A stretch of DNA of 64,000 nt, taken from assembly GCA_964252035.1 (NCBI GenBank), contig OZ176208.1; one strand, written 5' to 3'. The notes under the pieces are model-generated. The model saw only the letters and a list, made by a program, of their open reading frames with translations. It searched no databases and was not told where the DNA came from. This document shows positions 26,692 through 49,073 of the stretch, one piece after another. A program made the position numbers and the translations under genes. Origin of the DNA: Podarcis erhardii. Lineage: Eukaryota. The number at the start of each line of letters is the position of its first letter. The stretch's first letter is position 1.

Positions 26692-27152
26692 TATATATAT
26701 ATATATATATATTGTGTCTAATATGAACACTTACAAAGCTGCAGGTGACAGGCAGTACCTTGGAAGATATGTTTCTCCTCTTTTGTACATAAGAGAATGT
26801 GTCTTCTAAAGTGGTGCCATCTGTGATATGCAATCATCCAAAAATTTAAAAAATGGGACTTTTGACTCAGAAATGTTGTGTTCATATGGAAGCTTATGCA
26901 GATTTAATTGATGACTTGATACATGAAATCCCAGGCAGCTAGGCAGTTACATTAAAACAACAACAACTAGCTAGCAACCCTAAGAAACGCTATGGAAAGA
27001 CATCAGCATGCAATTTTGTACTACACCTTTCTGTTTTTGTTTTAATGTTGCAGTTGGCCTTGTCTGCTGAAAAGATCTTGCTCACTTTCAACCAGTTCGT
27101 TAGCATCCCTGTTATCATCCATTTCCTCTTCATCATCTTCACGATCAGCCAG

Positions 27153-27252
27153 ATGCAATACAATGTCAAAGAATTGATTTCTCTGGCTAGAAGGCCATCA
27201 TCTTGTTTTGACAAGGAAGGAAAACTGACCATATGCAGAATGCTAAGGGATG
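27153..27252 (+). CDS. INPP4B: Coding exon (probable first coding exon) of a PH-domain-containing INPP4-family inositol polyphosphate 4-phosphatase long isoform; paralog uncertain, INPP4B favoured
   Basis: ATG at 27153 reads MQYNVKELISLARRPSSCFDKEGKLTICRMLRD+G, then donor GATG|gtaaat (phase 1). Acceptor candidates are ttttgttttaatgttgcag|27054 or the pyrimidine-rich ...cacgatcagccag just before the ATG. The peptide resembles, from memory, the invertebrate INPP4 N-terminus (MRFNKQEL..LA..PS.KFDKEG.L) and PLEKHJ1 (MRYNEKELQALSRQP). The symbol is inferred from family resemblance and large introns, not from a database hit. Confidence 0.65.
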
Positions 27253-28108
27253 GTAAATGTATAGGTAAAAATAGTTGGCATTGGCAGTCGTCTGTGCACG
27301 TATGTTTGGCAGCTGTTGTCTGCTCACTGTTTTAGTATTCACAGATTTGCTGGTATAATCCGTTTTCTTCATTGCTAATGGCTGAGTGCTCCTAAACACC
27401 TTCGTAATTGCTTTTCTGCCATAGCTATGGTGGATTAGACTCTCACTGGTATGTGCAAACAAAGATGAAAGTAATAGTCCTGCTGCTTGTTGCTAACTGG
27501 ATTAATTTACATAGGGGAATGAGAGAAGTTCTCTTCTTGTGTGTTATATCAAACTACTTATCAAGTTGCACACTTTCTGCATGCTGGGGAGAAACAGGCC
27601 TCTGCTTAGTTTCTGGGTGCTATGCATGTTTAGGAGCACAGACAGTGCAAGGAGCTGCTAAAATGAATGGGAAGGCCTACACATTTTCACATCCAGCCCT
27701 TGTTCTTCCCTCAGTACATTTGGTTTGATGCTAACAACTACAACAAGATGGTCAAAACACTTAATGGAACTAACCTAATTCTGGGCCAAGAAAAGTTGAG
27801 TTCTGTGGCCTCTTAAATTGAACTAATTTGCATGCATTTGCCTATTTTGCACACCTTCCTCTTTGTTTTTATTTTAATTGCAAGTAAGAGTACAAAGTTG
27901 TCCTTAACCACTCCATCTTGTCATTGTCTTTGGAACCATCACTATATTTGGGCTTGAAATGTTCAGATCTGTTTTTCATTTTTGTTTCATTTTAACTTTG
28001 TTTAGCTCTGTTCCACATTCATTTCCATTTGGTGGTTTGCAACCCGCAGAAATGTCAACAAATACATTAAATGGCACATTGCCATCCTATCACAATTCAA
28101 AACATAAC

Positions 28109-28413
28109 TTCTTCCTGTTTCTGGCGGTGAGAAATGGCTGACACCCACACGATCGGACCTTAGCCGTGCCAGTAATTCAGGGTTGATATGGGGATAATTC
28201 ACCCTGGCAGATCCCCAGGGTGGGGGAGACTGTCTCATAGACCCGCAGTTCATCTGAGATTTGTCAGCTGGTAGGACGTTGGGTCCTAGAGCACAGCATG
28301 GCTGGCACTCTCCAAAGTCACTCTCACAAGCCGGAAATATTGGTTTGATAAAATAATTCGATTTGGACAATAAACAGACATAGTCTGGACTGAAGAAGAC
28401 TGAGAAAAAATCT
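28109..28413 (+). mobile_element. 305-bp retroposed insertion of unknown family (L1 5'-UTR-like)
   Basis: Flanked by the exact 17-bp direct repeat ACAATTCAAAACATAAC (28092-28108 and 28414-28430). GC/CpG-rich. AATAAA at 28369 and A6 at 28405-28410. Confidence 0.65.
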
Positions 28414-29890
28414 ACAATTCAAAACATAACCAAGAACAAGTAATAAATAAATAAATCAAGAATCCACTTCACATATGCAACATACTATCAACAAAAAAAC
28501 AGCAGATAACAACAGAATAAAGTCACCCCCATACATTTCAAACAACCAAGACAAAATTAGAAAGAATGCATTACACAAAATATCATTCCCCATGGGTTGT
28601 ACCTAATGCTGCTGTTCCACTTTTGTTACAGATTTCTACTTGCACAACAGAACTCATTTCTCTCTTCAGTCCTGCAGCCTCCCACTTCAAAATCTGCTGC
28701 AGAGAGTTGGAGCACCCTTTGGAGCAAATTTTGGGGGCTTGCAGGGGGAGGAGAGGAATGGAAAGTTCCATTGTGTGAGCAGAATTCTGCACAGGCAGTA
28801 ATGGATAGAGCCCCATATTTTTGCTGCTGGCAGTGCTAGAAATTCATACCAGCCTACATTTTACTGACAAAAATACATTCTGTGCAACTCTCCTAATTTC
28901 ATGCCAAAGAGAATTTTGCAAGCCTTGCCCTGCTCCCCATTGCATACTGGTGTAAATTGTCCACTGCATTTCTTATGCATTGAACTCTGTACCTACCCTG
29001 TGATTTACAAGCTAAGAGAATGGTTGTTTTTCTGTAAAACATCTACTAGCAAAAGGATAATACATTATCAGCAGTACAAAATGTAGTCTAACCGACTGTT
29101 TCACTCTAGACTGTGTGCTAGAGATGAGACACAGCCAATCTCCATTCACAGTGCAGTCCTAAACATGTTGAATCAGAATGAAACCCCACTGAGTTCAGTA
29201 GGACTTAACTGTACTGCCAGGTAAATAAATATGGGATTGTAGACTCAGAGTTTTAACTTCTAGAGATCATGTGGAGGAAGCTTTAACCCCATGGAGGATG
29301 GCAGTGGTAGTACAGTATTGCCTGTTAACATATTTGAGCAAGGGATTCCCAAAAGTCAAAAATATGGAACAGAGCTTACGACATAGGGACTGTTCATGAT
29401 AAACAGGCAGTTGAAGCATATGGAAATTTTATTTATTTTGCAATAACTGATGTAGGAGATCAGTTTTCTGAAGATAGCTGGATTTTTCTATTACCCCACC
29501 CATCAAGTTCATTTCTATCTCCTGTGGTCTGAATCAAGTTATTTATTTATTTTAACTCACTAGGGACATGAATTAACTTTCCAATACCAGGATGTTTGTG
29601 TTTTCAACCTTGCTTTGTCAATGGTTACAGTAACGGTTTCAGATGCATTTGAGTTCTAACATATCCAAGTCTGTCCTTTCGGCATTTCATTTCCTTGTAA
29701 CTCGCCTGATTACAACCCTTCTTCCAACACAACAGTATACACCTGTCAACTTGGATAAGGTATTTTGGTACCTTAAAGACCAGCAAATCTATCATGGCAT
29801 ATGTTTTTGTGTTTTAAAATACACTTTTAAAGTGTCTTTTAAAGTGACAAAAGTCTCTGATGTTTTAATAGGTATTAGTTATATTGAACA

Positions 29891-30253
29891 GGGACACTGG
29901 TTGCACTGTGGGTTAAACCACTGTGAATCTTGGGCTTGCCGATCAAAAGGTCGGTGGTTCGAATCCCCGTGATGAGGTGAGCTCCCATTGTTCAGTCCCA
30001 GCTCCTGCCAACCTAGCAGTTTGAAAGCAGGCAGTCCAAGTAGATAAATAGGTATTGCTCCAGCGGGAAGGTAAACGGTGTTTCCGTGTGCTGCTTTGGT
30101 TTCACCAAAAGCGGCTTAGTCATGCTGGCCACATGACCTAGAAAAACTGTCTGCGGACAAACGTCAGCTCCCTAGGCCAGTAAAGTGAGATGAGCGCCGC
30201 AACCTCAGAGTCGTTCGCGGCTGGACTTAATTGTGAGGGGTCCCTTTACCTTT
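29891..30253 (+). mobile_element. Sauria SINE, full length
   Basis: Same family. TSD TTATATTGAACA at 29879-29890 and 30254-30265. Confidence 0.95.
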
Positions 30254-30892
30254 TTATATTGAACACCATCTTATGGGGGGGGGGCTTTAAAAGGCTTCTG
30301 GCTGGCACTGGTTTTTAACACAGTGTGTTAATCTCTGAAGACAAGCTTAATTCTAGCCCACTTTGTCATGCAGAGCACCCCCTCCTGTGCTTATGTCTTC
30401 ATACCACTGTGTTGATGTTTTTAGAAATGACAAAAATAATCCAAATATTACCCGTACGATGTGTGTTGTTTAGAGTAAAATAAATCAATTAAGTCTGTAA
30501 CAACCCAGTGAAAAGAATAAATATTGAGTTTTCCCAGTAAGGTTCATCTGCTGAAGCAAGGTTTGCATGGTTGTCTTGTGCAAAAGAGCAAGTCTGTGTT
30601 CTCTTTTGCAAAATGGAACAAAGCAAAAGAAATCATCACCGAGTGTATGCTGCAGTCTCTAATTCTGTCAGCTGCAGGATAACTGAAAACTTCTGGGAAG
30701 TTAATCTGACATTTAGCAGCATGTTATAAGTCAGCTGCCAAGTGAAGCTGATTTTTCATTAATGACTTCCCCATTAAACTTCATTAGAAATGCATCTTCT
30801 TTAAGAAGAAATATATGAAGGGAGGAGGGTATTATTTATTGTTATCTTCATCATCGTCATTATTATTAATACTATGCTGCTTTTGCATGCAG

Positions 30893-30957
30893 AGCCAAGA
30901 GAGAGATGGTGTCGTCTGAAAGGAAATCTGCTCTTTCTAATGAAAAATAAGAATAAG
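30893..30957 (+). CDS. INPP4B: Second coding exon of the same gene: PH-domain core (E)PRERWCRLKGNLLFLMKNKNK
   Basis: Acceptor gcttttgcatgcag|AG and donor AATAAG|gtaatt. The 65-nt exon enters in phase 1, matching the previous exon, and exits in phase 0 with no stop. ERWCRLKGNLLF matches the ERWCRLRGNLLFY motif of invertebrate INPP4 PH domains and the RWFVLRGNMLFY motif of the PHETA/Ses type. Confidence 0.7.
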
Positions 30958-32059
30958 GTAATTCATTTCTTTCTCTTCCTTCATATTTGTGCCTCTTCCT
31001 GAATTTACACAATTCTTTTCACTTTTTAAAAACCCCTTGGTATGATTCTATGGATATAAATATTCAGTATTTTTGGCAGTAGCCTAAACATTACCATCCG
31101 TTTACCTTTATGGCTGGTTATAAAATGTGAGACATTCCTCAGTAGCATCAACAATGCTACTGAATGATTGGCTGCATCAGAAATGACTTGAGGCCAAACA
31201 GTGTCCTAATTTGATGTGTAAAAGAAGATGTCAATCCAGAATCCTCCAGCAGACTTTTTTTGACTGCAGAATCCACATCTTAATTCCTACTATTGTTACA
31301 GAAAGATAGAATTGGGGAGGTCTGTAATGCTTTTCTGGGGCTGTTTGTGCTGAATATTATTCTTACAATAGTGTCCGTTCTAGGAGAAAGTAGTTGTGTA
31401 TATTTGCCTTTCTTTTGATTCAGTTAAAAGAAGCTTTCAGAACCAGTTTTTAATTCAAGTTTTAAATCTTGGGATTTTGGGAAAAGAAACAAGGAATGAG
31501 AGGTTTAACTATTTTCATTATCTTTCACAGTTGACAAACCTTGACACATTTGGAGTCATGGCAATAGAAAGTGAGAAGCTAATTATTATTTTTGTCTGGT
31601 TCAGACATTATAATTTTTGGAGGGGTCAGATAAGCCAGAACTGCTAATATGAGATTCAGATAACTTTATCTGTAGCAAACATTGGTGGAATCTGTCTTTG
31701 TCGTTACCTCCTGCCACAAATAGCTTCAGTAAATGTTTATTTGGAGGGATTAATTTCTGCTAAAAATAAAATTGTATAACTTGTAGCATGATTGCAGCAG
31801 TGTAAAGGCTAGTTTCAGGTGGTTTTCGCCTTCTTTGAAAATTATACATATAAAAAAAAGAAAACGAAAACAGATAATCTAGGTCAGTTGTCTTCTGGAG
31901 GCTCCGTTCAGACATCATGCCACACTATGACTCTAACTGTGGATTGTCAGTTCATATTTTACACCAAAGTACAGTAAGCAGAAACCATGACTTGCAAATC
32001 CATTTCAGACAATGGTGGTTTTTTGTTTTTTTTTTTAATTCTGGATTTCTTTCTGATTA

Positions 32060-32330
32060 CTTACCTTCCTTAACCATGAGTTGACATAATGTCTGAATTA
32101 AGTTTACCTACCTCCTTGGTATTGCCCTGTCCTCCAAGGAACTCAAGTAGTATACATGGTTCTCTTCTCCACCTCCCACTCCACATCTCATTAATTATCC
32201 AATAGAACCTATATTGCTTAATATGACACAACACACATCTACAAAGTCTAGGACTAGTTAACCAGAAGGCCTGGTGTGTTAGCTCCTGGGACACCATAGC
32301 TGATATACATATAGGGACTACATATGGCAA
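32060..32330 (-). mobile_element. Possible degraded L1 ORF2 C-terminal fragment
   Basis: Minus-strand peptide CRCVLC...FYWIINEMW...ILLEFLG weakly resembles the L1 ORF2 Cys/Trp-rich tail. Confidence 0.35.
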
Positions 32331-33291
32331 AATGCTAATATATCACATAGGGATAGTAAGTTTTCAAACAATGTAAGTGAGTGACTAAGAATATTGTGGT
32401 GAGAACATTGTGGCCTTGTCTCCATCCTATGCATATTCAAGAAACCGTATGACCAGATCATACACTTGTACAAATGAAAGCAGGTAGTTCATTGCAAATT
32501 TAAATATGTACAGATTGCGCGCACACACAAAAACTGGATATGTGTAGTGTTACAGTATAGGTCATGAACCAGAATGTGTGTTTAAGCACTTATGTGTGTC
32601 CATATACCAACGAGAGGTTTAGGATCTTTTGCTGGAGTTATGACTTGCACTTGTTATGAACATGTGTTTACCCACAAGTTCCCACACACCAAAGGAATAA
32701 AGAAAACTTAGTTTATTATATGAAATAGAAGTGATGGAATATATATAAATGCTGCTTCAGACAGTAAAATTATAATTTAAGCAGGCAGCAACTTCCACAA
32801 TACCTTGATCTAAAGAGTGGCAGAAATAGCTAACTATTTTTTAAAAATCCTGTAGAAAAGTGAGCTTGGCAATTTTGTCACAGAAACCTAGAATTAGTAT
32901 AAAACCTAATTATGGTTTTGCAAGGCAGAAATGGAAAAGGAAGGATATAACTAGCCTTAAGCATGTGTATGCTGGTCCTTGAGAGGGTTGGATAAGTTCT
33001 GTTGAAGCTAGCAGAGCCAACTGCCTACTGGGATTCTGAGGTTTTTAATATGTTTAGCTAATGTCTCCTAGTAGGAAAGGGAGGGGCCTTGAAATGAACA
33101 CATCCTGCCCTTTTCTCATCTTGCCCATTCTAGTGAGAAAATGACTAAAAACTGGCCAACCTGTTTGCAAAAATGAAAGGTTGTGAAAGTGAGCCATTAA
33201 CTGAACCTGGCCACCTCTTAGTTTGTTCTCTGCTTTCGAATCATTCTGCCATGGTGTGGATGGCTCCCACTGAGGAGTTGAGAATCCTGTA

Positions 33292-33522
33292 CAGTGGTAC
33301 CTTGGGTTACATACGCTTCAGGTTACATATGCTTCAGGTTACAGACTCCGCTAACCCAGAAATAGTACCTCGGGTTAAGAACTTTGCTTCAGGATGAGAA
33401 CACAAATCATTCTCTGGCAGCAGGAGGCCCCATTAGCTAAAGTGGTGCTTCAGGTTAAGAACAGTTTCAGGTTAAGAACATACCTCTGGAACGAATTAAG
33501 TACTTAACCCGAGGTACCACTG
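33292..33522. mobile_element. Tigger/pogo-like MITE family 1
   Basis: ta|cagtggtacc...ggtaccactg|ta. Confidence 0.95.
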
Positions 33523-34951
33523 TACTTGGAAACTAAATTTCCATGTGTTAATTTTTAGAGGGTGTGAGGAACTCAGGATATGCCTGGATGTCTTTCAAGA
33601 GACTAGACTGGAATCATAAATATAACAAGGCTAGCAGAAGGTTCACGGTGGGGTATCCCTTGTCATATTTAGCCATGTCAGTCTTCTAACTTATGCCATG
33701 ATCTACAGAGATAGACCGTATCATAAGTTTAGATTCACAGTGGTTTGAGGGTTGGTGTTTCTCTCCATGATTGAACTCATTCTCCTAAGCATGTTCAGTA
33801 CACACACTTCCAGTTATCTGCTTCATATTGGCCCAAAATTATTTATTGCAGAGGACCATATTTGAGAAATGCATGAAATATGGTTAAGTGACTCGTGGAG
33901 CAACTATTTTGATTCAGGCATGTAACTGTATTCCCTGCCAACCTAGTTAGGTTGAATTTCAGTAATGCAATGAAGGTATGGAACTAGATTTAGGTCTGGA
34001 GATGCTTCCATCTTAATGTTTTTTTCCACATATTCAAATGAACGCTTGATGTAGGACATTTACTGTGACCACCAAGTATAGCTAACCACATTATGTGAAC
34101 ATATTGGCCGGTAGCTCTGGATCGGCTGGTGAATGTGTCAAGTCATGGAACCTCAGATAATGCAGATATATGGCTGATTTCTCTTTTACCTTTCTCCCAA
34201 TTCCTACATAGCGTATGAAGCATTTAAAATGCTTATATAATCAGACAGCTATTAAAACATTTCACAGATATCTAGGTCACACCTTTTCACATGGAGAAAC
34301 GTTTGCTGTTGGTTGCTTTCATGGTATCAAAATTACCATTATTAAGTTTCTGAAAAAAATGTTTTTGTCTATCTAGCAGACTCTTATGATTTCTCTCTCG
34401 GTAAACTATTCAGCATTAGAAATTTGATCTCATTGAGAACCTTTCCATGTGACCTTTCTAGCTTCTCAAACTTCTGAATGCTTATATATTTGCTTTATGC
34501 AAACTGTATTAGGTACAAAAGGAGTATGAAACCTAATTATGGTTTTTCTGTGCAATAATTGTTCCATGGGGCCCTGAATAAATATGAGTGTAGAAGTACA
34601 TGTTTTAAAACCTACTTTAATATTTTTATTTAAAAGTGGATTTGTGATCAGTAGGCTGTAGTAATTTCCTTAGAACAATCATTACTATCATTTGTAGTAT
34701 ATCCTTCTTAGCTTGCAGCTTAATGATGCAGTAGTAAGGACTGTTCCCATCTATTAGCTCAATTTGCCTCTGTGCATGAACGGTACATTTATATTGCTTA
34801 GAAACTTCAGATTCTTTGTGTAGGATTTTGAAAAGTGCATTTAAAGCCTGCTCAAAATTAATTTGTATGCCTTATATAAATTAACTTGTTAAATCCTGCA
34901 AATTCCACAAGATATTAGGTAATATAGGCAGCCATATTTCTTAGTTTAAGT

Positions 34952-35540
34952 TGTTACGGTAAAATCTGGGTGTGAGGCTGCTCTGCCACCCAGCTCGTCG
35001 GACTAAGTCCGCGGGTCCCTGCGGAGGAAAATGAGCTCAGCCGGAGACAGGAGCAAGCTGCAGAAGATCCAAGTTTATTGTGCAACAGGTTCAAAGCGAG
35101 ATTGAACAGCGAGAAAGGGGTGACATGAACTTTTGAAACTTCCCTCCATGTCCCAGAATACAGTGCAAAATACATCCCAGTTACATCATGAATGCATTAA
35201 GAAGAGGTTGGGTTACACAGATTACATCATAAATACATGAGGAAGAGGTTGGGTTACACAGGATTAACATATGGAGGAGGGAGGGGGGAATATGCAGAGC
35301 TGGAGATATGCGCAGATAAGCACATCCTGAGTACCGGTGATGAGAAGACAATGGTCCATGTACTGGCATTGCCCGGAGGAAAGGCTTAGCAGAGTGATTT
35401 GACAGGATTAGGGTCTTGACACCTTGCTTGAGGGATTATGGAGGACAGGGGAGGTGTCATGGAGTCCTAGAGAAATTGAGCAAATTGGCACGTTGAGTTT
35501 CTATCAGTTTTATAGATTTTAGTCCCTTTTGACATTGACA
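34952..35540 (-). mobile_element. Probable solo LTR (ERV-like), boundaries approximate
   Basis: Begins TGTTAC and ends TTGACA. Minus-strand AATAAA (plus GTTTATTG, about 35075). Internal direct repeat GAAGAGGTTGGGTTACACAG x2. No exact TSD. Confidence 0.55.
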
Positions 35541-37767
35541 ATTGGAAATAAATGGATATATTGTAGCAAAGAAGAAGGTGAAGAAGACATGCCCCCCCTT
35601 CCATATCAAAGTTTAGATCATTTTAAATACTGCTTCGGTTGGTATTCAGGTTGGGTTCCTTGTACAATTGTGAAGCTCTCAAACATTTGCTTTAACCTAA
35701 CTACCATTAAAAATGGTTCTCTCTGAAAGCAAGTTTTGTGTGACATATTAAGGCTGCTGTCAATTTTTATGGTAACCTTTTAATCCATCTGGAATTGAGG
35801 GGTCTGACTGAAAGTAATGTAAGGCTCTTAGCTGTGCAAGCATGAAGGTGAATGTAGTCATATGCTTAATGATCAAGTGTATTTAAATAAAAAGTGAGGA
35901 ATGTACTGCTGTGTGACTTGCTCCGTAATGAATTGCGTTTCCATAAACCAGTTGCATTCCTAGGCACAGGAGTGCTGGTAGGCAAGATTAATGAGCAAAT
36001 TGAAATATCCACATTGCCAGTAATTTTAAGCTTTCTTGCAATGTTTGTAAAAGCTTTATGTAAACTACATTCTCACAGCTTATATCACAGGTTTTAATGT
36101 ATTATTACCAGTTGACAGAAAAGCATCAAAGTAAAATTGTTGATTGATTCATAAATCAATAATTGCAGTTTATGTGTTAGGGGGAAAAATGTGAGAATAA
36201 TGGCTTGTTTTAAGTGTTGTGATGTGGCATGCATAGTAATCACCTATAAAGCTGTGAAAAGGTTATGCAGGGTTTCAAAGCATGCCAGTGAAAAATGTAG
36301 ACTATGAAATTTTATAGACAAAAAAACTCCCCATGGTGGGTTTTTTAATAGCTTGTGTTCTTTGATTTCCCATGCTTAAAGATGACTCTGGCTGCATAGA
36401 TGTAATGTGAAATCATGGTTTGTCTAGCTAAACTTGTTTTGTGTTAATGTCTATGCGCAGATGCTTATGTGAATGATCATTGGGCTCATGAAATCCTGCC
36501 TCCCTTTCTTTGTCTTGTACATGGCAGCTTGGAGATCACAAGCTTTCTTTTCCATTTTAAAGCAACCAATTTGTCAGTGTGAGTGAACCCAGACAAACAG
36601 TGGTCATATTAAACTTTGGTTCAGATATAAGAGGTTGTTTTTTTTTTAGCTTTTATAAGTCAATTTTTATAGTGAGAGAGGACTAACGGGATCTTGATTA
36701 AGACCTAAATGGACAGAATTGAACTTGCTGATATATCCAATTTAGCAATTTCATGCTAGAGTGTTCAATTGACCTCTTTTTGTTAGATAATTTTGAATTT
36801 CTGGTCTGCAGTCAAATGTTTTTGGATATTCAAATGACCTCACATTGGTTTCTGCATGGTGCTATTTTTTTATGGCAGGTTTGTGCCTATTTGTTCTTTT
36901 GAGTAGAGACTAATCTGTTTGTCCTATGCATAGTGGCTTTATTGGCAGGTGATGTTAGGGACTGAAGAGACCTGTGAAATTTGGATCAACTCATTTCCTC
37001 ATGAGTTATCTTCCTTAGCACCAAACCTCTGCTTTAAGCACCAATTTGCTATTGTTGCTCTGTGAAATGTTCATTTCTTTTTTAAAACTTACCCTGGCCA
37101 CAGATACCCAGGACAACAAGCAACTACTCTTATAATACCTAATTCTCTATATTTTATATCCAGGCAGTCCAGAATATGCATAATCTCTAAGTGAGAACCT
37201 GCAACCTCTATAACAGAAAACTAAGAGATGGTGAGGACTAACAGAGGATGAAGTGGGTGCAAGCTGTTTAGGGAGGAGGGTGGGGAAAATATGGCATGGA
37301 TTATACAATTTCTACAATTACACAAAGTGTGAAATGTTGCAGTAGTTTAAACATGTAATATAAACATAGAAAATGTTGTATAAAATGTCTCTGGCCAAAG
37401 AATATACTGCAGTGTTACCTGCTGCATTCTAATACATGATCTACATGTTTGAGTTTTATCTGAATTGAAAAAAAGTGGGGGTGGGTTTACACATAATCCT
37501 AACCTGTTTGACAGTTGTTTTAGCTAATATCTGTCCACTGCAGAACATGTGTATAAACCCAGAACTCATTTGCAAATATCAGTTGTGTATAATTAGTTTG
37601 ATAGACGTGAAGCTGGTCTAATTGAACTGCTGTGTTTATGTGATGCCATTAAACATCTTCTGGTGTCAGCCTTTGGCCTGCAGCACAATATTGCATTCAC
37701 CGTGGGGATGGCACAGATGATAGCACCTCTGTCGAAAATATTTTAGTTGCCCTAATATTCATGAGTA

Positions 37768-37982
37768 CAGTGGTACCTCGGGTTACAGATGCTTCAGGTT
37801 ACAGACTCCGCTAACCCAGAAATAGTACCTCGGGTTGAGAACTTTGCTTCAGGATGAGAACAGAAATCGCGCGGCGGCAGTGGGAGGCCCCATTAGCTAA
37901 ACTGGTACCTCAGGTTAAGAACAGTTTTAAGTTAAGAGTGGACCTCCAGAACGAATTAAGTTCTTAACCCGAGGTACCACTG
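37768..37982. mobile_element. Tigger/pogo-like MITE family 1
   Basis: ta|cagtggtacctcggg...cccgaggtaccactg|ta. Confidence 0.95.
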
Positions 37983-38138
37983 TACTTATTGTACATCGTT
38001 AAATTAGCTCAATTCTTGACCATTCTTTCAGCATCACAGGTTTTAATCCCTAAACTTGAAGAGCTGCTGCTATTAGACATAATCAGCAAGTCACTGGCTT
38101 GCTGTGTTAGAACCTTGATTCTTAGCTGCCCTCTCAAA

Positions 38139-38469
38139 AAAGGTAAAGGGACCCCTGACCATTAGGTCCAGTCGTGACCGACTCTGGGGTTGCGGCGCTC
38201 ATCTCGCTTTAGTGGCCGAGGGAGCTGGCGTACAGCTTCCGGGTCATGTGGCCAGCATGACTAAGCCGCTTCTGGTCAACCAGAGCAGCGCACGGAAACA
38301 CCGTTTACCTTCCCGCCGGAGCGGTACCTATTTATCTACTTGCACTTTGACGTGCTTTCGAACTGCTAGGTTGGCAGGAGCAGGGACCGAGCAATGGGCG
38401 CTCACCCTGTTGCGGGGATTCGAACCACCAACCTTCTGATTGGTTTAACCCACAGTGCCAGCCATGTCC
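38139..38469 (-). mobile_element. Sauria SINE
   Basis: aaaggtaaagggacccctgaccattaggtcc...ggtttaacccacagtgccagccatgtcc is the reverse complement of the family. Confidence 0.95.
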
Positions 38470-41400
38470 TGTCTTCTCTCTTACAGCACTGCAAACATTT
38501 CTGAGCAAAGCAAGCCAGCCTTATAATGTGCCAATTTAGAATATGTTTCACCAGATTGAAGCCCTCCCTTGCAGTTGGAGTTGTATTCCTGCTGCAGAAG
38601 CTACGTAAGTTGTGGCATTAAAGGGTGCTACACATATACTTTTTTTCAGGACTTTGAAGTGCAAATGTCCACACTGACCTGAGCAGATGTGGGTACTTGG
38701 GGTTTCTCAGGCTGATGCCAATTGAATGCATATCCAAGGGCAAATTAACGTAATCAGCCTTGATTTGAAAATCTGCTCTGTGTACGCCACTGTATTGAAA
38801 AACACTGAGTAAATGTCCTTCTGTCAGTGCTACAATTCAACAGAATGAGCCTCTGCCTAATTTCTTTACCAGTCATCAAAGGCATCAGAGCTCCTTATGT
38901 GATCATCTTGGAAGTCCCTTTCACGATTAAAGATGACCAACCACAGTGTTCCAGTAGAACAATGGTTCCTGACCCAGAACCTTAAGATTTATTCTTCTCT
39001 GTAGAACTCCTTGCGTGCTTTTCACATGAGCTGCTTTCCCCCACACCAAGATGATCTCTGTTGTGGAGTGTTGTGTGGAAAACCCCCAAATATCTACTTT
39101 TTATTAGTTGTATGTTTGTATGTGGTAGTATCTAATTGCACCCAAAACACTTGCATGTTTTAGATATGGTGGTTGTCCTTCATAGCGGCTATTGCTGAGA
39201 AGGGAAAATGCCACATAGAAAGTACCCCTTGCTGATGTTCTTATCTGCTTTATAATGTGAGTTGACAGTAGGTGGCAGCAGTAAACTCCTTTGTTGAAGA
39301 CCCTCCTGGTTTTGTGGACTTTTAGAAATATTAATATGTTTTATGGCAATCTGATTTATGAAGATGAAGGCAAGTCAGGGATGAGAAATCTCTGCTGTGC
39401 AGTAGGATATGTTCAGAGCTTATGGAATAAGATGTGTACATGGAGTAAAGATTTTAGATGGGCCCTTCAGCCATTGTGCAACTTAAGAATAAGTACTGGT
39501 GCTGGCTGACTCTGGGTTCTTGATGTAATGTATTGCCTGTCCCACTGCGATGTTTACAGAGAAACTGCATCTTTTATCCCTCCCTCAGCTTCAATATATG
39601 GTGACTTGTGTAGCATAGTATGGTGAATTGTCATTTTACCAGGGCATCTGTGGCACTCTAGAGAGCACTGTTGGCATGCTGGCCTTGGAAAGCCTACTTA
39701 TATGCCTTTATGTGCTAATGCACATGAAAGATTTCTGTGTTTAGTTAAAATACTTAAAAGCAGCTTGTTCTGTACTAACTCAGCCATTATAATGTAGGTC
39801 AGGGAGGAGAAAAAAGGAAGGTAATTTCATTAAATGTAGCTATCCAGCTTAGTTTTTTTCTATTATTCTTAACAAGTTTTTTCTCTTAAAAACAGTGCAG
39901 TACTTGCTAAGAAACCTCCTAACAAAATTGCCATCCAGCATTAACATTGGTTCACAGCTTGCTGAGATTTTATTATTGTTGGCTCTCAGCAATAACATAT
40001 CCCTCCCCCAAATATTTTATTCCAAGACCTTCTTCAACATCCTTTCATCACCTCCCATTCTGTTTCTTTCCCAATAAATAAGCTTATATAACTGAGGTGT
40101 ACGTGAGAGAGAGAGGGAGGGAGGGAGGGAGAGAGACTGGAGGAAGAGAGATGGACAGACAGTCAGAGACTTTCTAGTAGAATAAACATATGACCAGTTC
40201 CAAGCGTTCCTCTGAGGGGAAAATGTGATAAAAAAGGAGAGGTTGTCAGCAGTGCTGTAGATTAACTCAGTAAAGCTAATGGATCAATTCTTTGGAGAAT
40301 AAAACTAAATTCGCCTGCAAAATATATTGCATATAACTGCTGCATCAAGTACCGAAGTTCTCCCGTCCAAAACCTCTAGGTACTCTGATTTCATTGGTTT
40401 TTGCATTAACAGAATGCAGTACTGTGAAGCAAATTTTATTAGGATTATGAAGTATTTGCAGCTGTTCTATTCTGTCTCTCTCTTGTCTTCTCTTTACTGA
40501 TGATTGGAGACTGCTGCATTAAAGGGTTCATGTTTATGGGATGACCAAAGCAACCGAGGGTTAAACAAACCACTTTTCCTCTTCAGAGCAAGATTTAAAG
40601 ACTTGGTTTTTAATGCAGTTCTTGTGTTTTCTGAAAGGCAGTTGTGTAAAGGTATCATTCGCTTAACAACATGTCTTAAGGCTTGATTTTGTAATGTGTT
40701 AAGAACATGTTGTGTGTCAGCACAGCACATTTCGTTTTCCTGAAGGAAAAGGTAGAACAATTATAAATGCTCTGATAACTGAGTGAGATGTAGCAGTCTG
40801 AAGAGATGAGTGTTGGTCATAATGGGAGATGTGCTAGTCCTTTCAACAGCTTGATACGGGCAGATCCCCCCCCCCCTTAGTACTCATAGTATTTGGAGTA
40901 TTCGGAGAACTTGTATCTGTACAACCATGCCCAGGTTTTATTGTAAGAGATTGGTGGTGGTAATGAACTTTTTTCAAGCATTCCATGCCAAGTGTTCCAT
41001 GTCAGTCCAGTACATGTGTGATTGGAAGCCAAATCATGGTTTTCTGATATGTAAATGAACCTGTCCTGATCCTTTGGCTCTCATACTCCCCCTTCTTTTC
41101 TCATTTCTTTGTATGCCATATGAAATTGAAAGTTCCCACTTTTGCTTTTAAACTAACCATATTTCATTTTGGTGTCTGAATTCTGGAAACTGGGTTTTTT
41201 TAGGCTTAGCAAGAACAACCTGGATCTGAAGCCGCAGGATCTGGCGTTAGTTGCAAATTGGAAATGGAGACATTTGCAGGCTCAGATATAAAACTTGGAA
41301 ATTGTGGTTGCTTCTTGCTTCTGAATTGTTATAATTCCATGGCGATCTGTTTGAAAGTTTTGTACACCTTTGGAACACATAAGTGTTATCCTAAATGAAT

Positions 41401-42212
41401 TATTTGTGAATTTACTTGGAATCCAGGTACCAAATTATAGAATATTAGTTGACAAGTAAATATGTGATAATGTTGAAGAAGATGCATGGAATGTTTAAAA
41501 TTAAACAATATTCTAAACCATATTTTGTGCATTTTTTTGTTTTGTATTTAGCTTGATCCCTTATAGCAGTTAACACTACAAAGATCAACTTCCACAGCTA
41601 TATAGCTATTGTAGCCCAGCTCCTTACCTTCATTTTGGTGTATATTATGGCTGAATTGGTTCGTTGCTTACAGAGCTGCAGTGGTTTCCCCAAAACTGGC
41701 CTAACTTACACCGCATAGTGTAACACCTTGAAAATGAGGTTCAGCACCTTTTTTGGGGAGCAGGGAAAACTACTACCCACATTTTCTTTTTCACCATATG
41801 TAGAATTGATCTGGAATGGCTGCCCGCTTTTAACATGCCTGTGCTGTTGCAAGTAAAAAAATGACATTGTGGCTAGCCTACTAATTATTCATCCTGCTTT
41901 CCTGCTAACAAATTATCACCTTTTATGGAATTTTAAACCACAGCACTTCTGGTCTATGAGCAAAATGTGTCATAAGCTCTGAAAAGTACATTTCATCATG
42001 TGGATTGCTCATTGCTGTATGGCATTATCTACTTATTTATCAAATGCCTGGTATCTTACAGGAGTGAATGAGCCTTTAAGTGGTTATGGAAGTAAGACAG
42101 CACAGGAAGAAAGAAATATTGGTTTTTGCTACCAAGATCACACATGCTGTGCACATGGACTGAGATAATTGGGCCACTCTGTCTTCTCCCCACCTGTTAG
42201 CTCCTTCTTATC

Positions 42213-42805
42213 AAAAAAGTGAATGCTATTCTAGGCTGCATCCCTTGTCCAGATCAAGGGAAATGATAGTACCACTCTATTCTGCCTTGGTCAGACAACA
42301 CCTGTAGTTCTGCATACAATTCTAGGCACCTCAGTTTAAGAAGGATGTTGGCAGGCTGGAATGTGTGCAGAGGAGGTGACTAAGATGATCAAGGGACTGG
42401 TAACCAAGCCTTATGAGGAATGGTTGAGGGAATTGGGTATGTTTAGCCTGGTAAAGAGGAGGCTGAGAAACTAAATTATAGCCATCTTCAAATATCTTAA
42501 GGGCTGTCACATAGAAGATGGAGCAAACTTGTCTTCTCCTGCTCCAGAGGCTAGGATCTGAACCAACGGCTTCAAGTTACAAGAAGGGAACTTGCAACTA
42601 AACATCAGGAATAACAGTAAGAGCTATTCGACAGTGGAGCAGACTCCCTCGGGGTGTCATGGATTCTTCTTCATTGGAGGTTTTTTGGCAGAGGTTGGAG
42701 GCCATCTGTCATGGATGCTTTAGTTGAGATTCCTGCATTCGCAGGGGTTGGACTACATGACCCTCAAGGTCCTTCCCAACTGTATAATTCTCTGATTCTC
42801 TGATT
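42213..42805 (+). mobile_element. CR1 LINE 3' fragment (RT C-terminus and ATTCT-type tail)
   Basis: Degenerate translation KKVNAILGCI...LYSALVR.HL..C.QF.APQFKKDV..LE.VQRR.TKMIKGL...YEE.LRELGMFSL.KRRLR. Ends in gattctctgattctctgatt. Confidence 0.9.
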
Positions 42806-44429
42806 GTCTATTTCTCAATTGATCTCATATCTAACTGGCTTTGCAGCTGGACAACCCCCATGTGAATTTTGCTATTGATTAGGAGCTGGCAAGGCATTTG
42901 GGATACACTTCAGTTTCCTCCCTCCTGCTGATAAAATAATTGAAATGTATGTGGACATGATGAGGATAGATGTGTTTACAAATTTGGCTGGAAGAGGAAG
43001 ATCTTTCATTTTTTTAATGTCAATTCTAAACAAATTTCTAAAGATATATACTAGATAGAAAACAGGTGATTTGTATCAAAAGAAAGTATGCTGGTAGGAA
43101 TGCAAGTACAAGCTATAAAAGAATTTTTTTAAAGCAATGAATGCTAATGTTGACTTGCTTTACAAACTCTAAAGCTGGGCAATGGAGAACTGCTATTGTG
43201 AATCAGCAGTCCAATTTTGGTTTTAATGTGCATTAAATACTAGGAGCTTGGGACTTATGCACCTGTTCTCATTACCTCTGAACATTTGTTCCTCATGGTC
43301 AGCTCCTCACAGGTGACAAGTGAGATGGGACAATGAGCCCCTAGGGATCTCTTTGCTAGTATCAAAGTCTTATTTACCCATTAATCATGTAATTAAAGCC
43401 AGAGGTGAAGGAAGTACCTGAGGATCATATCAATTCCAAATATAGACAAAATCAAGTATGTTTTTGTGCAAGCTTTGAAAAAACTGCACACACCCCCCCC
43501 CCCCCGCTTACAGAGAGGATCATTTGGCTAAATATTTTTTTGCCCATTTAACTTTCTGGCATTATGAAACACAAATTCCCCAATTAAACAACCATTTACT
43601 TGCTGTGCTTTTGAGAAACAACTGGCCTGCAAAAACTACAAAAGCCGAAAAGGCAGCAGCAACCCAAGTGAATAATAAAATATATTGCTGTGCCAGTTGG
43701 TGCACAAGGGTGTATTGTAAAATAAGTATTGAATCCAATTTATTATGAAGTGAAGTGGCAGTATTCATCTTCATGATGGGTTGAATCTAGAATTCCTTGT
43801 GTGAAGTTGTGCACATAAAGTGGGATGCTCTTGGATCTCTCCTGCCCCCTTCCCCCCGGCAATCCCCTGAAAATATGGTCTGGAGGGTTTAAGAGACCCT
43901 CTGGAGCAGTATAGAGGGTAACTTGGGGGCTGCAGCAGGAACTCAAGGAAAATCGCTCACCTTCTATTTCCTTTTGCCCATCTACACATTCAGCAGGCAG
44001 TAAGGGAGCTCTGTGGTTGCATCATTCTGCAGGCAACAGGGCTGGACGGAGGGATACCTCCAACCAAGAAAAAACACCCCTATCACCTGGCGTAAAGGTG
44101 GTCTGGATCACTCTATAAATAAAGTGATCTTCATGTGGTTTGAATGTTTTATTCAAACAAATTTTGTAAAGAAGACAACTCAGTAGCATACATACTCTGA
44201 CATTACAGAAAAATAAAGGCACTGTGAAATTTTAAGACAACTGTACTTGAATCCCTGTAACTGAGTCAGAGTTCTCTGTCCTTTGATCTGAAACAACCTG
44301 ATTTGGGGAAGCAACATCTTCCTTTGCACACCAATGTCCTTCCACTCAGACACAGATCTAGACTTACCTTCCTGGGAAGCTGATACCAACTTCCTGGGTG
44401 CCAAAGAGGATGACTCAGTAATGAACAGG

Positions 44430-46600
44430 GATTAGTCACATACAGAGGAGCAGTCATGTAGGAGCTCTGCTGTAACAGCAGCACAAAGGTCACATGAGTG
44501 ACTGTCATCCGCTTGCTCTGGAGCAGTGATCCCCCCCAGCCTGGGTGAGTGGCGCAGTGAATTGACTGCTTCTTCCACAGAGCGAAGCCGCATAGCTGTT
44601 GCCGGAGAGCGCTGACTTTTTCCTGTGGACAATTTGATCTTAAAGCAACTACCCGTGAGTAGAGCGGAGAATTGGATTTTTAAACGTCTTAATTTGGTGT
44701 CGAAATGGGGAGGTCTAAAACAGGAAGTCCACCTTCCCCTTTTGTAAATAGATTGAAGCAATGAGGATGCAAGCTGAAGCCTCGGAAAGCCTATTGTAAA
44801 GGACTAAATTTCCATCGGTAAAAAATACTAAACCCCCCTTGGTGGCAGGAGAAGAGGGGGGAAAGTTTTGGACTGAGTATACCTGCAGGAGAGAGCAAAC
44901 AGAGTTAAAATACCACCGCTCCGATTCTGGAAACGGGCTGCCAACAGGACTGACGTGTTCTGGAATGCTTATTGATCGTGATTAGAATGTTCAGTGACAG
45001 TTAGTTAAATAAGGAATACATTGTTTCCACTGTCTCCGTCTGCATTTAAAAAGGAGTAAAAGTAACAGAAAATTGAAACTAACTTTATTGTTTGAATTGA
45101 GTTTAAAAGGACTAATACAAATAGAAACTGTTTCCCTATAGAGGAAGCCCTGGAAACTGTTACAAGAGTTGAGCTGGGGGAATTTCCAGCTGCAAGATAA
45201 AAAGCTGTGAGATTCTGGGGACCTTGAATCGGTTGAGAATGTCGTCAGAAGAGGCCTTAGTGGTTTTATTATGTAAGATAAGTGACTCACTGGAACAGCT
45301 TCACAAAAAGGTGGATGTGGTAACTAACCAAAATCGATAATTTGGGACAAAAAGTGAACACCAATACAGACACTATTCAGAAATTGATACAGGAATCTAC
45401 TTTGACATGGCAAACTGCGGAGAAGGCTAGGGAGAAAGTTACTGCCATTGAATCTAAAGTAACACAATTGGAGAGAGAGAGAGAGAGTCCCAGCCTTACA
45501 GATGCAATTTGATGACCATAAGTTGATGCCTGCTATGATTGAATCTAAAGAAAATCAGATTTTGAGGATCAGAGCCCTACCTGAACTCGAGAAGGAAAGT
45601 TTGATAGATTTCCCCACACAGGAATTTGATGATTTTTGGGACCGGGACTTGGGTCAAGAAGAGATTAAAACTGTGAGGGCCTTTGGACTTGGAAGAGGAG
45701 GGAAAAAAGAGAAGAACAAAATAAGAGACTGTTGGAACTACCAAAAGAACTTAGAAGAACAACAGTTAAGAGTGGAAATTTTGAAAGACGTTCTGAAATA
45801 CCTTTTGGATTTTAGATTTAACTACGGAGATTTGGTTGCCCTGTCGAGAAGGAATAAAATCATCTTTAGGTGGGAGTTTCCCCGAGATTTACTCTTTAGC
45901 TTCAAAGGAAGGAAAATAAAAATAAGATCAGTGGAAGACAAAGTAAAGTTCATGTATAAATATGAAGAAGACTCGCAGAAGGGACTTGGAAAAGAGTTAA
46001 GAGCATCGGACAGAAGATCACCAGGTTGATGGACTATATGGAATTGGCGGATATGACTGGCAGAATCCGGGACCAGGGAGAAGAGTCGGTGGAAGAAGAT
46101 TGGAAAAAGTTTAAAGACTATTTATAAAAATATTGTAAGATTAATGAGTGTTAGAAAAATGTTGGAAAGGAGTTATATGGCTTTAGTAGAGATGTTATAA
46201 GGAATTAAGTACAAATAGATTATTAGAGTATTAAAGGGAAAATAAGGTTAAAATATGTTAAGACAATTATATATTAAAGGGAAAAAATAAGGTTAGAATA
46301 TGTTAAGATAAATTACAGGACAGAAAACAGAGGAAGATGGAAAGGAATTGCTGAAACAGTTAATTAAAGTGGAATACAAAAAGGGAGGTGTGAGGAGGTC
46401 GTTGAAACAAGGGAATGAAAGACAAGATACTGAAATTATTGGATGTGTTTTAAATTGTGTTTATTTTGTTTTGTTAATTTAATATTATGGTGTTGGTGTT
46501 GTGTGGTGTTTTTGGTTTTGTATTGTATTGTATTGTTTTGTTTAACTCTTTTTCTTTCTTTTGTAGTCTTTAAAATGTTAATAATTTTTTTTTTTAAAAG
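44430..46600 (+). mobile_element. L1-derived ORF1-only element (HAL1-like), degraded; ends approximate
   Basis: GC-rich 5' region. Frameshifted ORF from about 45239: coiled-coil-like segment, then ILRIRALPE...IIFRWEFPRDLLFSFKGRKIKIRSVED (L1 ORF1/Transposase_22-like, ORF 45502-46029). About 570 bp of 3' UTR with a GT/T-rich end follows, with no ORF2. Confidence 0.7.
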
Positions 46601-47837
46601 AAAGGTTTACCAAAAGATTTTGCAGTAGCTATTAATAGAGGGAGCCGATGAGCAGAAAGTCATCCATGTAGAACATGATGGGGCACAATCCTACCTTGTC
46701 CTTTACTGTTAGTTTCAAATGAGGATGGTCCAGTGTCATTTCCACTGAGCCACTCACACCTTTGGCATCTCCTCCTGCAATTGGCTGGAGATGAATCTGA
46801 ATGAAGAAATCTCAAGCCGGTCCACTATGTCCCACTATTGCCCAAACTTTGTGATGCTAATTGGTCAAGTGGCAAGGCAAGGATGTTTGAGATGCTCAGG
46901 CTATCTGCCTGGGTTGCTAATGGCTAAGCTGCCCTCCACTGCAACTCTTGGGTTTTGCCTCTATGCCAGGCCTGGTCCTGAATACTGTATTTAAAACTGC
47001 TGCAACTATTTGGATGGTTTTATTGGGCCAAATCTGTTTAAAAGCAACAAGAGATTTCCCAGTGATTAGTTCAGTCAAGGCAGAATGCCTCTTATGTGTG
47101 TGCCTCTCTCTGAAGAAAATAGAAAGAAGTCATTTGTTTAATAAGTTATGATTCAGCATATCATAAAATAACAATGCAAAAATACTTGAAATTGCTACTT
47201 TTATTCTTGATGCAGGTTTTTATGACTTTCAGAATTATAAAAGGAATATGTATGTTTATATCAGAAAATGTGTTCGTAGGGCATGGCTGGGGTTGGCAGC
47301 ATTTCAAACACATTTAAAGTTTAAAGTCCAAGGGCTAGTTATTTAATTTATTCCCATATATCCACATGTATCAAGCATCTGGTATATACGGTAACTGGCT
47401 TTTTGAATAAAAGAGGCTTTCTGCCCTAATACAAGAGATTTTCAAAATAATTGTGGTCCTGCTATTTACTGTTTACTGAAGCATTTCAAGATCTAAAGGA
47501 AAACAAAACAAAAAAACTATTCAGTGCATAAACAGACAGTACACCTTTTGTCGTAGAATCTTCTCAAAGAAAAAGGTGCTTTCTTATAAAACTCAGCCTT
47601 GTACAATTCCATAATGACATCTTGTGTCACCTGTGTTTGTGTAATGGATAGAGAAAAATATTGGTTAGTGCAGAGGTCTGCTCTTAACAGAAGTGTTTTC
47701 ATTCCAAATGGACTGACTTAAGAAACAAATAGATTAACCTTTTTATATTTAACATTAGCAAAAATAAAATAAAAAAGAAACCCTCTGTTTGCTTTTATTT
47801 CTCATGTTTGTATAATACATTGGATTATCTCCTTTTT

Positions 47838-47950
47838 TTCCTTGCAATAATCCTGTGAAATAGGTTACGCTGAAAATTAGTTACTTGCCCGAAACCATAC
47901 AGCGAGCTTCCACCTCAAAAGGGTATTTGAATCGGGACCTCTAGCATGCC
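47838..47950 (-). mobile_element. Degraded MIR/Ther1-like SINE
   Basis: caataatcctgtgaaataggttacgctgaaa...gcccgaaaccatacagcgagcttc...tttgaatcggga. Confidence 0.55.
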
Positions 47951-48365
47951 TAACCAAATGTGGGCTCTTTCAATTCCTACAGGCTTTTGTCTTAAAATCC
48001 TGAATACTTAAATTTAAACTTAAATCAGTAATGCACATTTCCAGGAGCACAAGTTTCAGGTTTCTACAAGACATGTGTAAACAGAATGCATCAAAACCTT
48101 GTGTAATATGCTTTTTAAAATGCATCCATGCCACTCTGGGCTCCTTTGAGAAGAAGGATGAGATATAAATTTAATAATAATTAAGTAATAATAAGTAAAT
48201 GTTTGGTATCATGTCTAGATGCAGGGATACTAACCTCTCATAGTAGCTGAGTGATAGTTATGGTGTCTCTGATACTGACAGAATTAGACTAGAAACAATG
48301 AGTACTTGTGATAGTAGAGCTCTCTTACTGATTTCCAGTTGGTGACTTATTGTCACTTTAATAGT

Positions 48366-48512
48366 AAATCATAGAATTGTAGAGCTGGAAGAGATCCTAT
48401 CATCTAGTCTAACCCCCAGCAATGCAGAAATATGCATCTGTCCCATATGGGGATCAAATCTGTGGCCTTGGTGTTATCAGCACCATGCTGTAACCAACTG
48501 AGCTATCCAGTG
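48366..48512 (-). mobile_element. tRNA(Ile-like)-headed SINE with CR1-type tail
   Basis: Reverse complement ggatagctcagttggttacagcatggtgctgataacaccaagg...tttgatcccc...ctagatgat...ctctacaattctatgatt. It is a degenerate tRNA head, not a functional tRNA. Confidence 0.75.
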
Positions 48513-49000
48513 GCACAACTAGTGAAAGCAATTAATGTGAGAATGCCTCTAAGATGGCTTTGATTTTTTCCAAATGACAGAGGGGGACCTAGTTAAATCA
48601 ATACATTTTAAATCATTCCCTTGCTGGATCATTTCTTGTCAAGTGAAGGCTTTTGTTTAGAGAGCCTGTCATATATTTTGCTTTGTGACTGATTATTCAG
48701 GGAACAGTGATTGACTGCAGCTCAGCAATGTCAAATATGTCAAAAAATATGCTAAGATTTACAGTTCCATTAATTTGGTGATAACTTTTTCTGCAGTCAC
48801 TGCAGTATGGGTGAGTCTTATGAAACACTAAGGTAGTGGCTACAGTCCTACGCCCCCTTGAACACAGTGTGGCTTCCCTGTGCATAAATATTCAGAGGAT
48901 TGCTCTGTAAATGCTGCGATAAAGCATTTGGCTTACTTTTACGTGCCCTGTGTTCTCCTGCCTCCAAACCTCATCTGCTGTTTTCAGGAATAGGAAGGAC

Positions 49001-49073
49001 TCCTTGCAGAGAAAATCAGCTAGTATCCTATCTTCCCCTTTAGAGAGATACTGGCTGATTTTCTCTGCAAGGA
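49001..49073. other. 73-nt near-perfect hairpin (27-bp stem)
   Basis: tccttgcagagaaaatcagctagtatc (49001-49027) pairs with gatactggctgattttctctgcaagga (49047-49073), with one G-U pair on the + strand. Confidence 0.9.

What the first reader, a model, noticed from the sequence alone, without database searches (positions are those of the whole stretch)
27153..30957. Invertebrate-type PH domain on a vertebrate INPP4-like gene
Seen: two exons with canonical splice sites and matching phases give MQYNVKELISLARRPSSCFDKEGKLTICRMLRDEPRERWCRLKGNLLFLMKNKNK. Established (from memory): insect INPP4 proteins begin with a PH domain (MRFNKQEL..LA..PS.KFDKEG.L...ERWCRLRGNLLFY), related to the PLEKHJ1 and PHETA1/2 PH domains. 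Canonical human INPP4A/B start at the C2 domain and have long 5' regions with non-coding exons. Inference: this lizard keeps intact exons for an ancestral PH-containing long INPP4 isoform (probably INPP4B) that mammals lost or that is under-annotated. That would add a lipid or protein targeting module to a PI(3,4)P2 phosphatase. The alternative is a separate PLEKHJ1/Ses-like PH gene.
Basis: partly seen in the sequence, partly recalled or inferred. Interest (0 to 1): 0.8.

Follow-up and report, generated by a model that had tools for sequence, protein, structure and literature searches.

The report
First PH-domain exons of lizard INPP4B
These two exons are real and begin the long, PH-domain-bearing form of the lipid phosphatase gene INPP4B, but public annotation already lists this form for lizards of the same genus, for birds, for bony fishes and for sharks, so it is ordinary.

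Summary
The two exons exist and splice in frame. Orthologues place the exon-1 donor 12 nt further downstream (27264|27265, not 27252|27253), which adds four residues (GKCI) and gives 59 aa rather than 55.

[quoted passage not shown] It is 95% identical to Zootoca vivipara isoform X3.

The same N-terminus heads full-length INPP4B models in other lizards, many birds, gar, bowfin, sturgeon, eels, sharks and rays. It also heads arachnid and insect INPP4. In the full-length proteins tested, the region passes Pfam PH (PF00169) in a lizard, gar and a spider and falls just short in Zootoca, and it models as a PH fold.

It is not new, because it is already annotated, although the papers I found describe INPP4B as starting at the C2 domain.

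Only these two exons lie in the window. Exon 3 is more than 33 kb downstream and outside it. No RNA run was available, so splicing rests on orthologous gene models and conservation. Whether mammals lost these exons was not testable here.

The parts
27054..27152 (+). 5' untranslated part of the exon that carries the start codon. The acceptor AG lies at 27052-27053, after a T-rich tract.
   Evidence: The older Podarcis muralis model XP_028600394.1 (P0002) matches the window only from about 27054 onward; its upstream GC-rich part is not in the window. The acceptor context is CTGTTTTTGTTTTAATGTTGCAG|TTG. Nucleotide conservation with L001 begins at about 27034.
27153..27264 (+). Coding part of PH exon 1: Met1 to Ile37 plus the first base of codon 38. 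By alignment to the Sceloporus model it encodes the N-terminal helix, strand beta1 and the first half of the beta1-beta2 loop.
Evidence: Exact match to P. muralis and P. raffonei INPP4B isoforms. Secondary structure comes from the model of the Sceloporus orthologue.
27265..30892 (+). Intron 1 (3,628 nt). It contains a high-copy SINE-like repeat at about 29780-30300.
   Evidence: GT..AG borders. Repeat depth in low-coverage DNA runs.
30893..30957 (+). PH exon 2 (65 nt): completes codon 38 (Glu) and encodes PRERWCRLKGNLLFLMKNKNK, that is strands beta2 and beta3 with the family's most conserved motif. It ends in phase 0.
   Evidence: tblastn 95.8% to Zootoca INPP4B. W, C, R, L, G, N, L, F and K of this motif are invariant across 25 INPP4 PH domains from lizards to insects.
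30958..64000 (+). Beginning of intron 2 (more than 33 kb). No further INPP4B exon lies in the window.
   Evidence: tblastn of six full-length lizard and bird INPP4B proteins, and of the exon-3 peptide, finds nothing beyond the two exons. The P. raffonei coding range spans about 218 kb.

Best explanation
[quoted passage not shown] Together they encode the first 59 residues of an N-terminal pleckstrin-homology (PH) domain: an N-terminal helix, strands beta1 to beta3 and the beta1-beta2 loop. The rest of the PH domain, the C2 domain and the CX5R 4-phosphatase domain are encoded by exons beyond the window.

The same gene also gives annotated short isoforms that start at an internal Met (MEIKEE...) just after the PH domain. 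I therefore infer that choice of promoter or first exon decides whether the enzyme carries the PH module. PH-C2-phosphatase is the layout shared with arthropod INPP4, so I also infer that the long form is the ancestral one.

What the PH domain binds is not shown. My reading is that it adds a membrane- or protein-targeting module in front of the C2 domain. It is probably a weak or non-canonical lipid binder, because only one of the three canonical phosphoinositide-contacting basic positions is conserved across the family.
For: Exons, frame and splice sites.

Exact 59-aa identity to XP_077790182.1 and XP_077790183.1 (P. muralis INPP4B X1, X2) and to XP_053259268.1 and others (P. raffonei); 95% identity to Zootoca X3.

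57 full-length 'type II 4-phosphatase' proteins from sharks, rays, gar, bowfin, sturgeon, eels, birds and lizards carry this N-terminus. Salmonid, tick, spider and insect INPP4 carry it too.

Pfam PH is above the gathering score in Sceloporus (29.7 against 25.1), gar (38.2) and a spider (35.3), each followed by a C2 match. A profile of 25 such N-termini hits 78 solved PH domains. The AlphaFold2 model (pLDDT 84, pTM 0.78) is a seven-stranded sandwich with a C-terminal helix, and Foldseek gives 204 PDB matches at E <= 1e-3; the 50 listed are PH domains or PH-containing proteins.

Short MEIKEE... isoforms in the same species. The P. raffonei coding range is about 218 kb, with PH and INPP4A_C2 Pfam hits on its product.
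Against: There is no transcript evidence for this genome. No RNA run holds the stretch, and the four runs laid were low-coverage DNA that covers intron and exon alike.

Linkage to the C2 and phosphatase exons cannot be seen inside the window. It rests on computed gene models of sister species.

The 55-aa fragment alone gives no Pfam or PDB sequence hit, as expected for about 40% of a PH domain.

The lipid-binding inference is weak. The (K/R)-X-R at the start of beta2 reads R-E-R in sauropsids and gar. In most other fishes, sharks and most of the arthropods aligned, only the last Arg is kept, and the beta1 Lys is not at the canonical position.
Confidence: 0.93

Rival explanations
1. The exons belong to a separate small PH-only gene of the PLEKHJ1 / PHETA (Ses) type, not to INPP4B.
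For: The older P. muralis annotation lists a stand-alone 'uncharacterized protein LOC114604459' (P0002) that reads from exon 1 into intron 1. No downstream INPP4B exon is visible in the window.
Against: No PLEKHJ1 or PHETA protein appeared among the phmmer hits, and every full-length hit alignable across the peptide was an INPP4 (the two long low-identity hits P0008 and P0009 were not examined). The current P. muralis and P. raffonei annotations join exactly these 59 residues to the C2 and phosphatase body. P0002 is simply exon 1 translated into the intron.
Confidence: 0.02
2. The exons are intact in sequence but no longer used in this species (a relic of the long isoform). They would be kept in gene models only by homology-guided prediction.
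For: No CpG-island promoter lies in the window.
Against: The open frame, start codon and all four splice signals are intact. The peptide is identical among three Podarcis-like genomes, while the adjacent untranslated sequence differs. The motif has been conserved since the shark-lizard split and beyond to arthropods.
Confidence: 0.04
3. The reader's donor at 27252|27253 is also used, as a minor alternative 5' splice site. That would give a beta1-beta2 loop four residues shorter.
For: ATG|GTAAAT is a good donor consensus and keeps the frame.
Against: No orthologous protein lacks the four residues. The GT is absent at that position in L001.
Confidence: 0.1

Closest known systems
[quoted passage not shown]
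   Same: The first 59 residues from the conserved Met are identical to the corrected splice product of the window. The exon 1/2 and exon 2/3 junction positions are the same, and the proteins continue into C2 and the 4-phosphatase.
   Different: The P. raffonei models start 36 codons further upstream, at an in-frame ATG (27045 in the window) that lies before the acceptor used by the older P. muralis model. The untranslated sequence of the window differs from both species at one or two translated positions, so the window comes from another, closely related genome.
PH-bearing INPP4B of birds, other lizards, gar, bowfin, sturgeon, eels, sharks and rays
   Same: The same PH-C2-phosphatase order, 55-84% identity over the 55-aa peptide, and the invariant ERWCRL(K/R)GNLLF core.
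   Different: Fishes and sharks have a beta1-beta2 loop that is two residues longer than the lacertid loop. Zootoca isoform X3 has an extra 18 residues after exon 2 that are not encoded in this window.
Arthropod INPP4 (spider KAG8198212.1, tick, thrips, spittlebug)
   Same: An N-terminal PH domain that starts MRFN/MRYN..., then C2, then the CX5R phosphatase. Pfam PH and C2 both match.
   Different: 32-36% identity to the lizard PH domain over its full length. These proteins are named 'type I A-like' by automatic annotation. The lineage has a single gene, so it is co-orthologous to both INPP4A and INPP4B (inference).
Mammalian canonical INPP4B as described in the literature (C2 domain, then phosphatase)
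   Same: The lizard short isoforms (938 aa, starting MEIKEE...) have this layout. Reviews describe human INPP4A and INPP4B as starting with a C2 domain (PMC5301276; PMC6563779).
   Different: The papers I read do not mention a PH domain. From memory only, human INPP4B begins MEIKEE..., which corresponds to the internal Met directly after the lizard PH domain. I also recall that NCBI's Conserved Domain Database has a PH_INPP4A_INPP4B model. Neither point was checked here.
PLEKHJ1 and PHETA1/2 (Ses) PH domains
   Same: A short N-terminal helix precedes beta1 in the model.
   Different: They were not retrieved by any search here, so the relationship was not tested. In any case these exons belong to INPP4B.

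Membership tests
INPP4B (type II inositol 3,4-bisphosphate 4-phosphatase), long PH-bearing isoform | N-terminal peptide orthologous to annotated INPP4B isoforms | tested here: met
   59/59 identity to P. muralis X1 and X2 and to P. raffonei X1, X2, X3 and X7; 95% to Zootoca X3.
INPP4B (type II inositol 3,4-bisphosphate 4-phosphatase), long PH-bearing isoform | Same gene carries the C2 domain and the CX5R 4-phosphatase domain | not testable with these tools
   No further exon lies in the 64-kb window. This is met in the orthologous models.
INPP4B (type II inositol 3,4-bisphosphate 4-phosphatase), long PH-bearing isoform | Exons are spliced into mRNA (junctions 27264^30893 and 30957^exon 3) | not testable with these tools
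   No RNA run holds the stretch. The runs laid were genomic DNA contigs.
PH domain (Pfam PF00169) | Profile score above Pfam's gathering threshold | tested here: met
   Full domain in orthologues: Sceloporus 29.7, gar 38.2 and spider 35.3 bits against a cut-off of 25.1. Zootoca X3, which has an 18-aa insert, scores 22.6 and falls below. The 55-aa fragment alone gives no hit.
PH domain (Pfam PF00169) | Seven-stranded beta-sandwich capped by a C-terminal helix | tested here: met
   The AF2 model of the Sceloporus orthologue has seven strands and helix 103-116, with pLDDT 84. Foldseek gives 204 PDB matches at E <= 1e-3, with ArhGAP9, Dbs, GRK2 and Grp1 PH domains at the top.
Canonical phosphoinositide-binding PH domains (K-Xn-(K/R)-X-R motif) | Basic residues at the end of beta1 and the start of beta2 | tested here: inconclusive
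   R-E-R precedes W in sauropsids and gar. Only the last Arg is nearly invariant across the 25 sequences, and no Lys sits at the canonical beta1 position.
PLEKHJ1 / PHETA stand-alone PH proteins | Short protein consisting essentially of the PH domain | tested here: not met
   Current orthologous models run on for about 1,050-1,100 aa into C2 and the phosphatase. The only stand-alone model is an intron read-through.

The most novel reading that the evidence does not exclude
Mammals have truly lost (or let decay) these PH-coding exons. The textbook C2-first INPP4B would then be an N-terminally truncated derivative of an ancestral PH-C2-phosphatase enzyme, and sauropsids and fishes would switch between PH-plus and PH-minus enzymes by promoter choice, with different membrane targeting of PI(3,4)P2 hydrolysis.
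Probability: 0.45. Interest if true: 0.4.

Novelty: already known. Interest (0 to 1): 0.15.

Why it matters
INPP4B is a much-studied regulator of PI3K/Akt signalling and a context-dependent tumour suppressor. The reviews I read describe it as starting at a C2 domain. An extra N-terminal PH module in non-mammalian vertebrates would give a second targeting domain and an isoform switch, neither of which is mentioned in the papers I found. The isoform itself is not a discovery, however, because automatic annotation already lists it for the same genus and for dozens of vertebrates. What remains open is the biology: what the PH domain binds, where the long form is expressed, and whether mammals lost it.

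Tried and rejected
- Pfam, PDB-sequence and word-index searches with the 55-aa peptide gave nothing. The fragment is too short, and the word search only sees proteins of 30-96 aa.
- The RNA evidence failed. The look-up of sequencing runs listed no RNA holder. The four 'RNA?' runs I laid turned out to be low-coverage genomic DNA, with contigs over introns as well as exons and no joint at the exon borders.
- I searched the window for exon 3 and later INPP4B exons, using eleven query proteins from fish, arachnids, lizards and a bird plus the exon-3 peptide. Nothing was found.
- I searched for the upstream GC-rich 5' exon of the older P. muralis model. It is not in the window, and the window has no CpG island.
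- The look-up of encoding contigs on P0002, P0072 and P0089 found no record. For P0082 it gave only the gene range, because the gene is too long for DNA to be returned.
- Five literature searches found no paper that describes an INPP4 PH domain.
- The ESM Atlas feature search gave only generic PH clusters.
- Pfam on the eight longest other ORFs, and Rfam on the whole window, found nothing.
- The scan's earlier findings hold nothing on this locus.
- The absence of mammals, amphibians, turtles and crocodilians from the hit list is not evidence of absence. Only one representative per 90% cluster is searched, and that representative may be a PH-less isoform.
Full report
**1. Observation**

The sequence at 27153 begins with ATG and stays open to a GT at 27253. 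A second segment at 30893-30957 is preceded by a pyrimidine-rich tract and CAG, and is followed by GTAATT.

One detail is wrong. A second donor, TAG|GTAAAA, lies 12 nt downstream at 27264|27265, in the same phase. Every orthologous protein retrieved later carries four extra residues exactly there:
- lacertids: DGKCI-EPRERW
- other lizards: DGKFI or DDKCI
- birds: DEKLI

It has an identical ATAG|GTAAAAAT at 27264, after which similarity falls off. The coding part of exon 1 is therefore 27153-27264 and the product of the two exons is 59 aa.

**2. Identity**

Searches with the short peptide against Pfam, PDB sequences and the word index were blank.

An exhaustive phmmer search of 1.84 billion representatives gave 11 hits. 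They fall into three groups:
- Read-through ORFs of lizards, including XP_028600394.1, 'uncharacterized LOC114604459' of Podarcis muralis.
- Fish proteins, including a 902-aa Salvelinus 'type II inositol 3,4-bisphosphate 4-phosphatase-like'. It starts with this motif and runs on through a C2-like region to the CKSAKDR phosphatase motif.
- Spider and tick INPP4 proteins with the same start.

Two region-restricted searches followed, using the PH parts of the salmonid protein and of a shark protein as queries. [quoted passage not shown] Insect and tick INPP4 also appeared.

The cluster around the Zootoca protein contains Podarcis muralis, P. raffonei, P. lilfordi, Lacerta agilis and Tiliqua isoforms. 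The corrected 59-aa product of the window is an exact substring of P. muralis INPP4B X1 and X2 and of P. raffonei X1, X2, X3 and X7. This settles the gene as INPP4B and settles that the isoform is already annotated.

The translated untranslated sequence differs by one or two residues from both Podarcis species. The window therefore comes from another, closely related lacertid.

**3. Anatomy in the window**

- The exon with the start codon begins at an acceptor at 27052-53. The older P. muralis model splices in there from a GC-rich upstream exon that is not in the window. The window has no CpG island.
- Intron 1 is 3,628 nt and holds a high-copy SINE-like repeat.
- Exon 2 ends in phase 0, and in Podarcis it is followed by an exon encoding CCEAAELVILERCC...
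- Neither that exon nor any other INPP4B exon is in the remaining 33 kb.
- In P. raffonei the coding range of the gene spans about 218 kb, so long introns are expected.
- Nothing else in the window matched Pfam or Rfam.

**4. Domain**

In full-length orthologues the region passes Pfam PH:
- Sceloporus: 29.7 bits
- gar: 38.2 bits
- spider: 35.3 bits

The gathering score is 25.1 bits, and a C2 match follows in each protein.

A profile of 25 such N-termini matched 78 solved PH domains by sequence.

An AlphaFold2 model of the Sceloporus domain, built on that alignment, has pLDDT 84 and pTM 0.78. It shows a short N-terminal helix, seven strands and a C-terminal helix, followed by a further long helix. 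Foldseek found 204 PDB matches at E <= 1e-3, and the 50 listed are PH domains or PH-containing proteins.

By alignment to that model, the two window exons encode the N-terminal helix, beta1, the beta1-beta2 loop, beta2 and beta3. In classical PH domains this is the half that forms the inositol-phosphate pocket.

**5. Mechanism (inferred)**

Podarcis annotations list three kinds of isoform:
- long isoforms that start at this Met;
- isoforms that start at the Met inside exon 2 (MKNKNK..., 30940 in the window), which would truncate the PH domain;
- 938-aa isoforms that start at MEIKEE..., an internal Met immediately after the PH domain.

I infer that alternative promoters or first exons decide whether INPP4B carries the PH module in front of its C2 domain. 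Because arthropod INPP4 has the same PH-C2-phosphatase order, I also infer that the long form is ancestral.

Ligand binding is not shown. Across 25 sequences the invariant core is ERWCRL(K/R)GNLLF. Of the canonical K-Xn-(K/R)-X-R signature only the last Arg is nearly invariant. Sauropsids and gar have R-E-R, while most other fishes, sharks and most of the arthropods aligned do not. I therefore rate canonical high-affinity 3-phosphoinositide binding as uncertain. A weak lipid-targeting or protein-targeting role is the more likely one.

**6. Evidence that is missing**

No RNA run holds the stretch. The four runs laid were genomic, with small contigs over intron and exon alike and no joints at the exon borders. 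Splicing and linkage to the phosphatase therefore rest on computed models of sister species and on conservation, not on reads from this genome.

**7. Comparison and novelty**

Reviews describe INPP4A and INPP4B as C2-first enzymes (PMC5301276; PMC6563779). Five full-text searches found no paper on an INPP4 PH domain.

Public annotation, however, already carries the PH-bearing isoform in the same genus and in dozens of vertebrates.

Two further points are from memory only and were not checked:
- NCBI's Conserved Domain Database has a PH_INPP4A_INPP4B model.
- Human INPP4B starts at MEIKEE..., which corresponds to the internal Met after the lizard PH domain.

The hit list contains no mammal, but only one representative per 90% cluster is searched, so this is not evidence of absence.

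**8. Verdict**

The finding is real and correctly interpreted apart from a 12-nt donor error, but it is already annotated and so of low interest as a discovery. The residual open question is the fate of these exons in mammals and what the PH domain does.

Noticed in passing
window 26300-26820 and 29780-30300: High-copy interspersed repeats. Summed contig depth runs from thousands to over 100,000, against about 0-5 in most flanking bins, in four low-coverage DNA runs of three organisms. Loose ends have tRNA-like heads (GGTTCGAATCC), so these look like SINEs, one just upstream of the exon and one inside intron 1.
   Followed up: partly
window 27045-27047: An in-frame ATG lies 36 codons upstream of the conserved start, just before the acceptor at 27052-53. 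P. raffonei RefSeq models start there and gain a hydrophobic 36-aa extension (MLQLALSAEK...). Other lizards, birds and fishes lack it, so it is probably a longest-ORF annotation choice rather than a real N-terminus.
   Followed up: partly
window 30940-30942: The Met inside exon 2 (MKNKNK...) is the annotated start of P. muralis X3, P. raffonei X5 and P. lilfordi X3 INPP4B isoforms. This implies transcripts that enter exon 2 without the exon-1 ATG and encode a PH domain lacking beta1 and beta2.
   Followed up: no
P0072 residues 60-77 (Zootoca vivipara INPP4B isoform X3): An 18-residue insert (HIVRSHLRGLAIRQGDTE) sits between exon 2 and the next exon. It drops the Pfam PH score below threshold. 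It is not encoded anywhere in this window and is absent from Podarcis and Lacerta models.
   Followed up: partly
window 45463-46029 (+) and 62383-62976 (+/-): These are the longest open frames in the window (175-197 aa). The first is rich in charged residues and the second overlaps an ORF on the opposite strand. Neither has a Pfam match, so they may be decayed retroelement pieces.
   Followed up: partly
L001-L004 (Logan contigs ERR14654720, ERR14654795, ERR14047986, ERR13725787): An orthologous exon 1 (MRFNAKDLALLARQPSGCFDKEGKLKICKVARDGKLI) from an unidentified species. It combines bird-like and lizard-like residues. Sequence similarity extends about 120 nt upstream of the ATG.
   Followed up: partly
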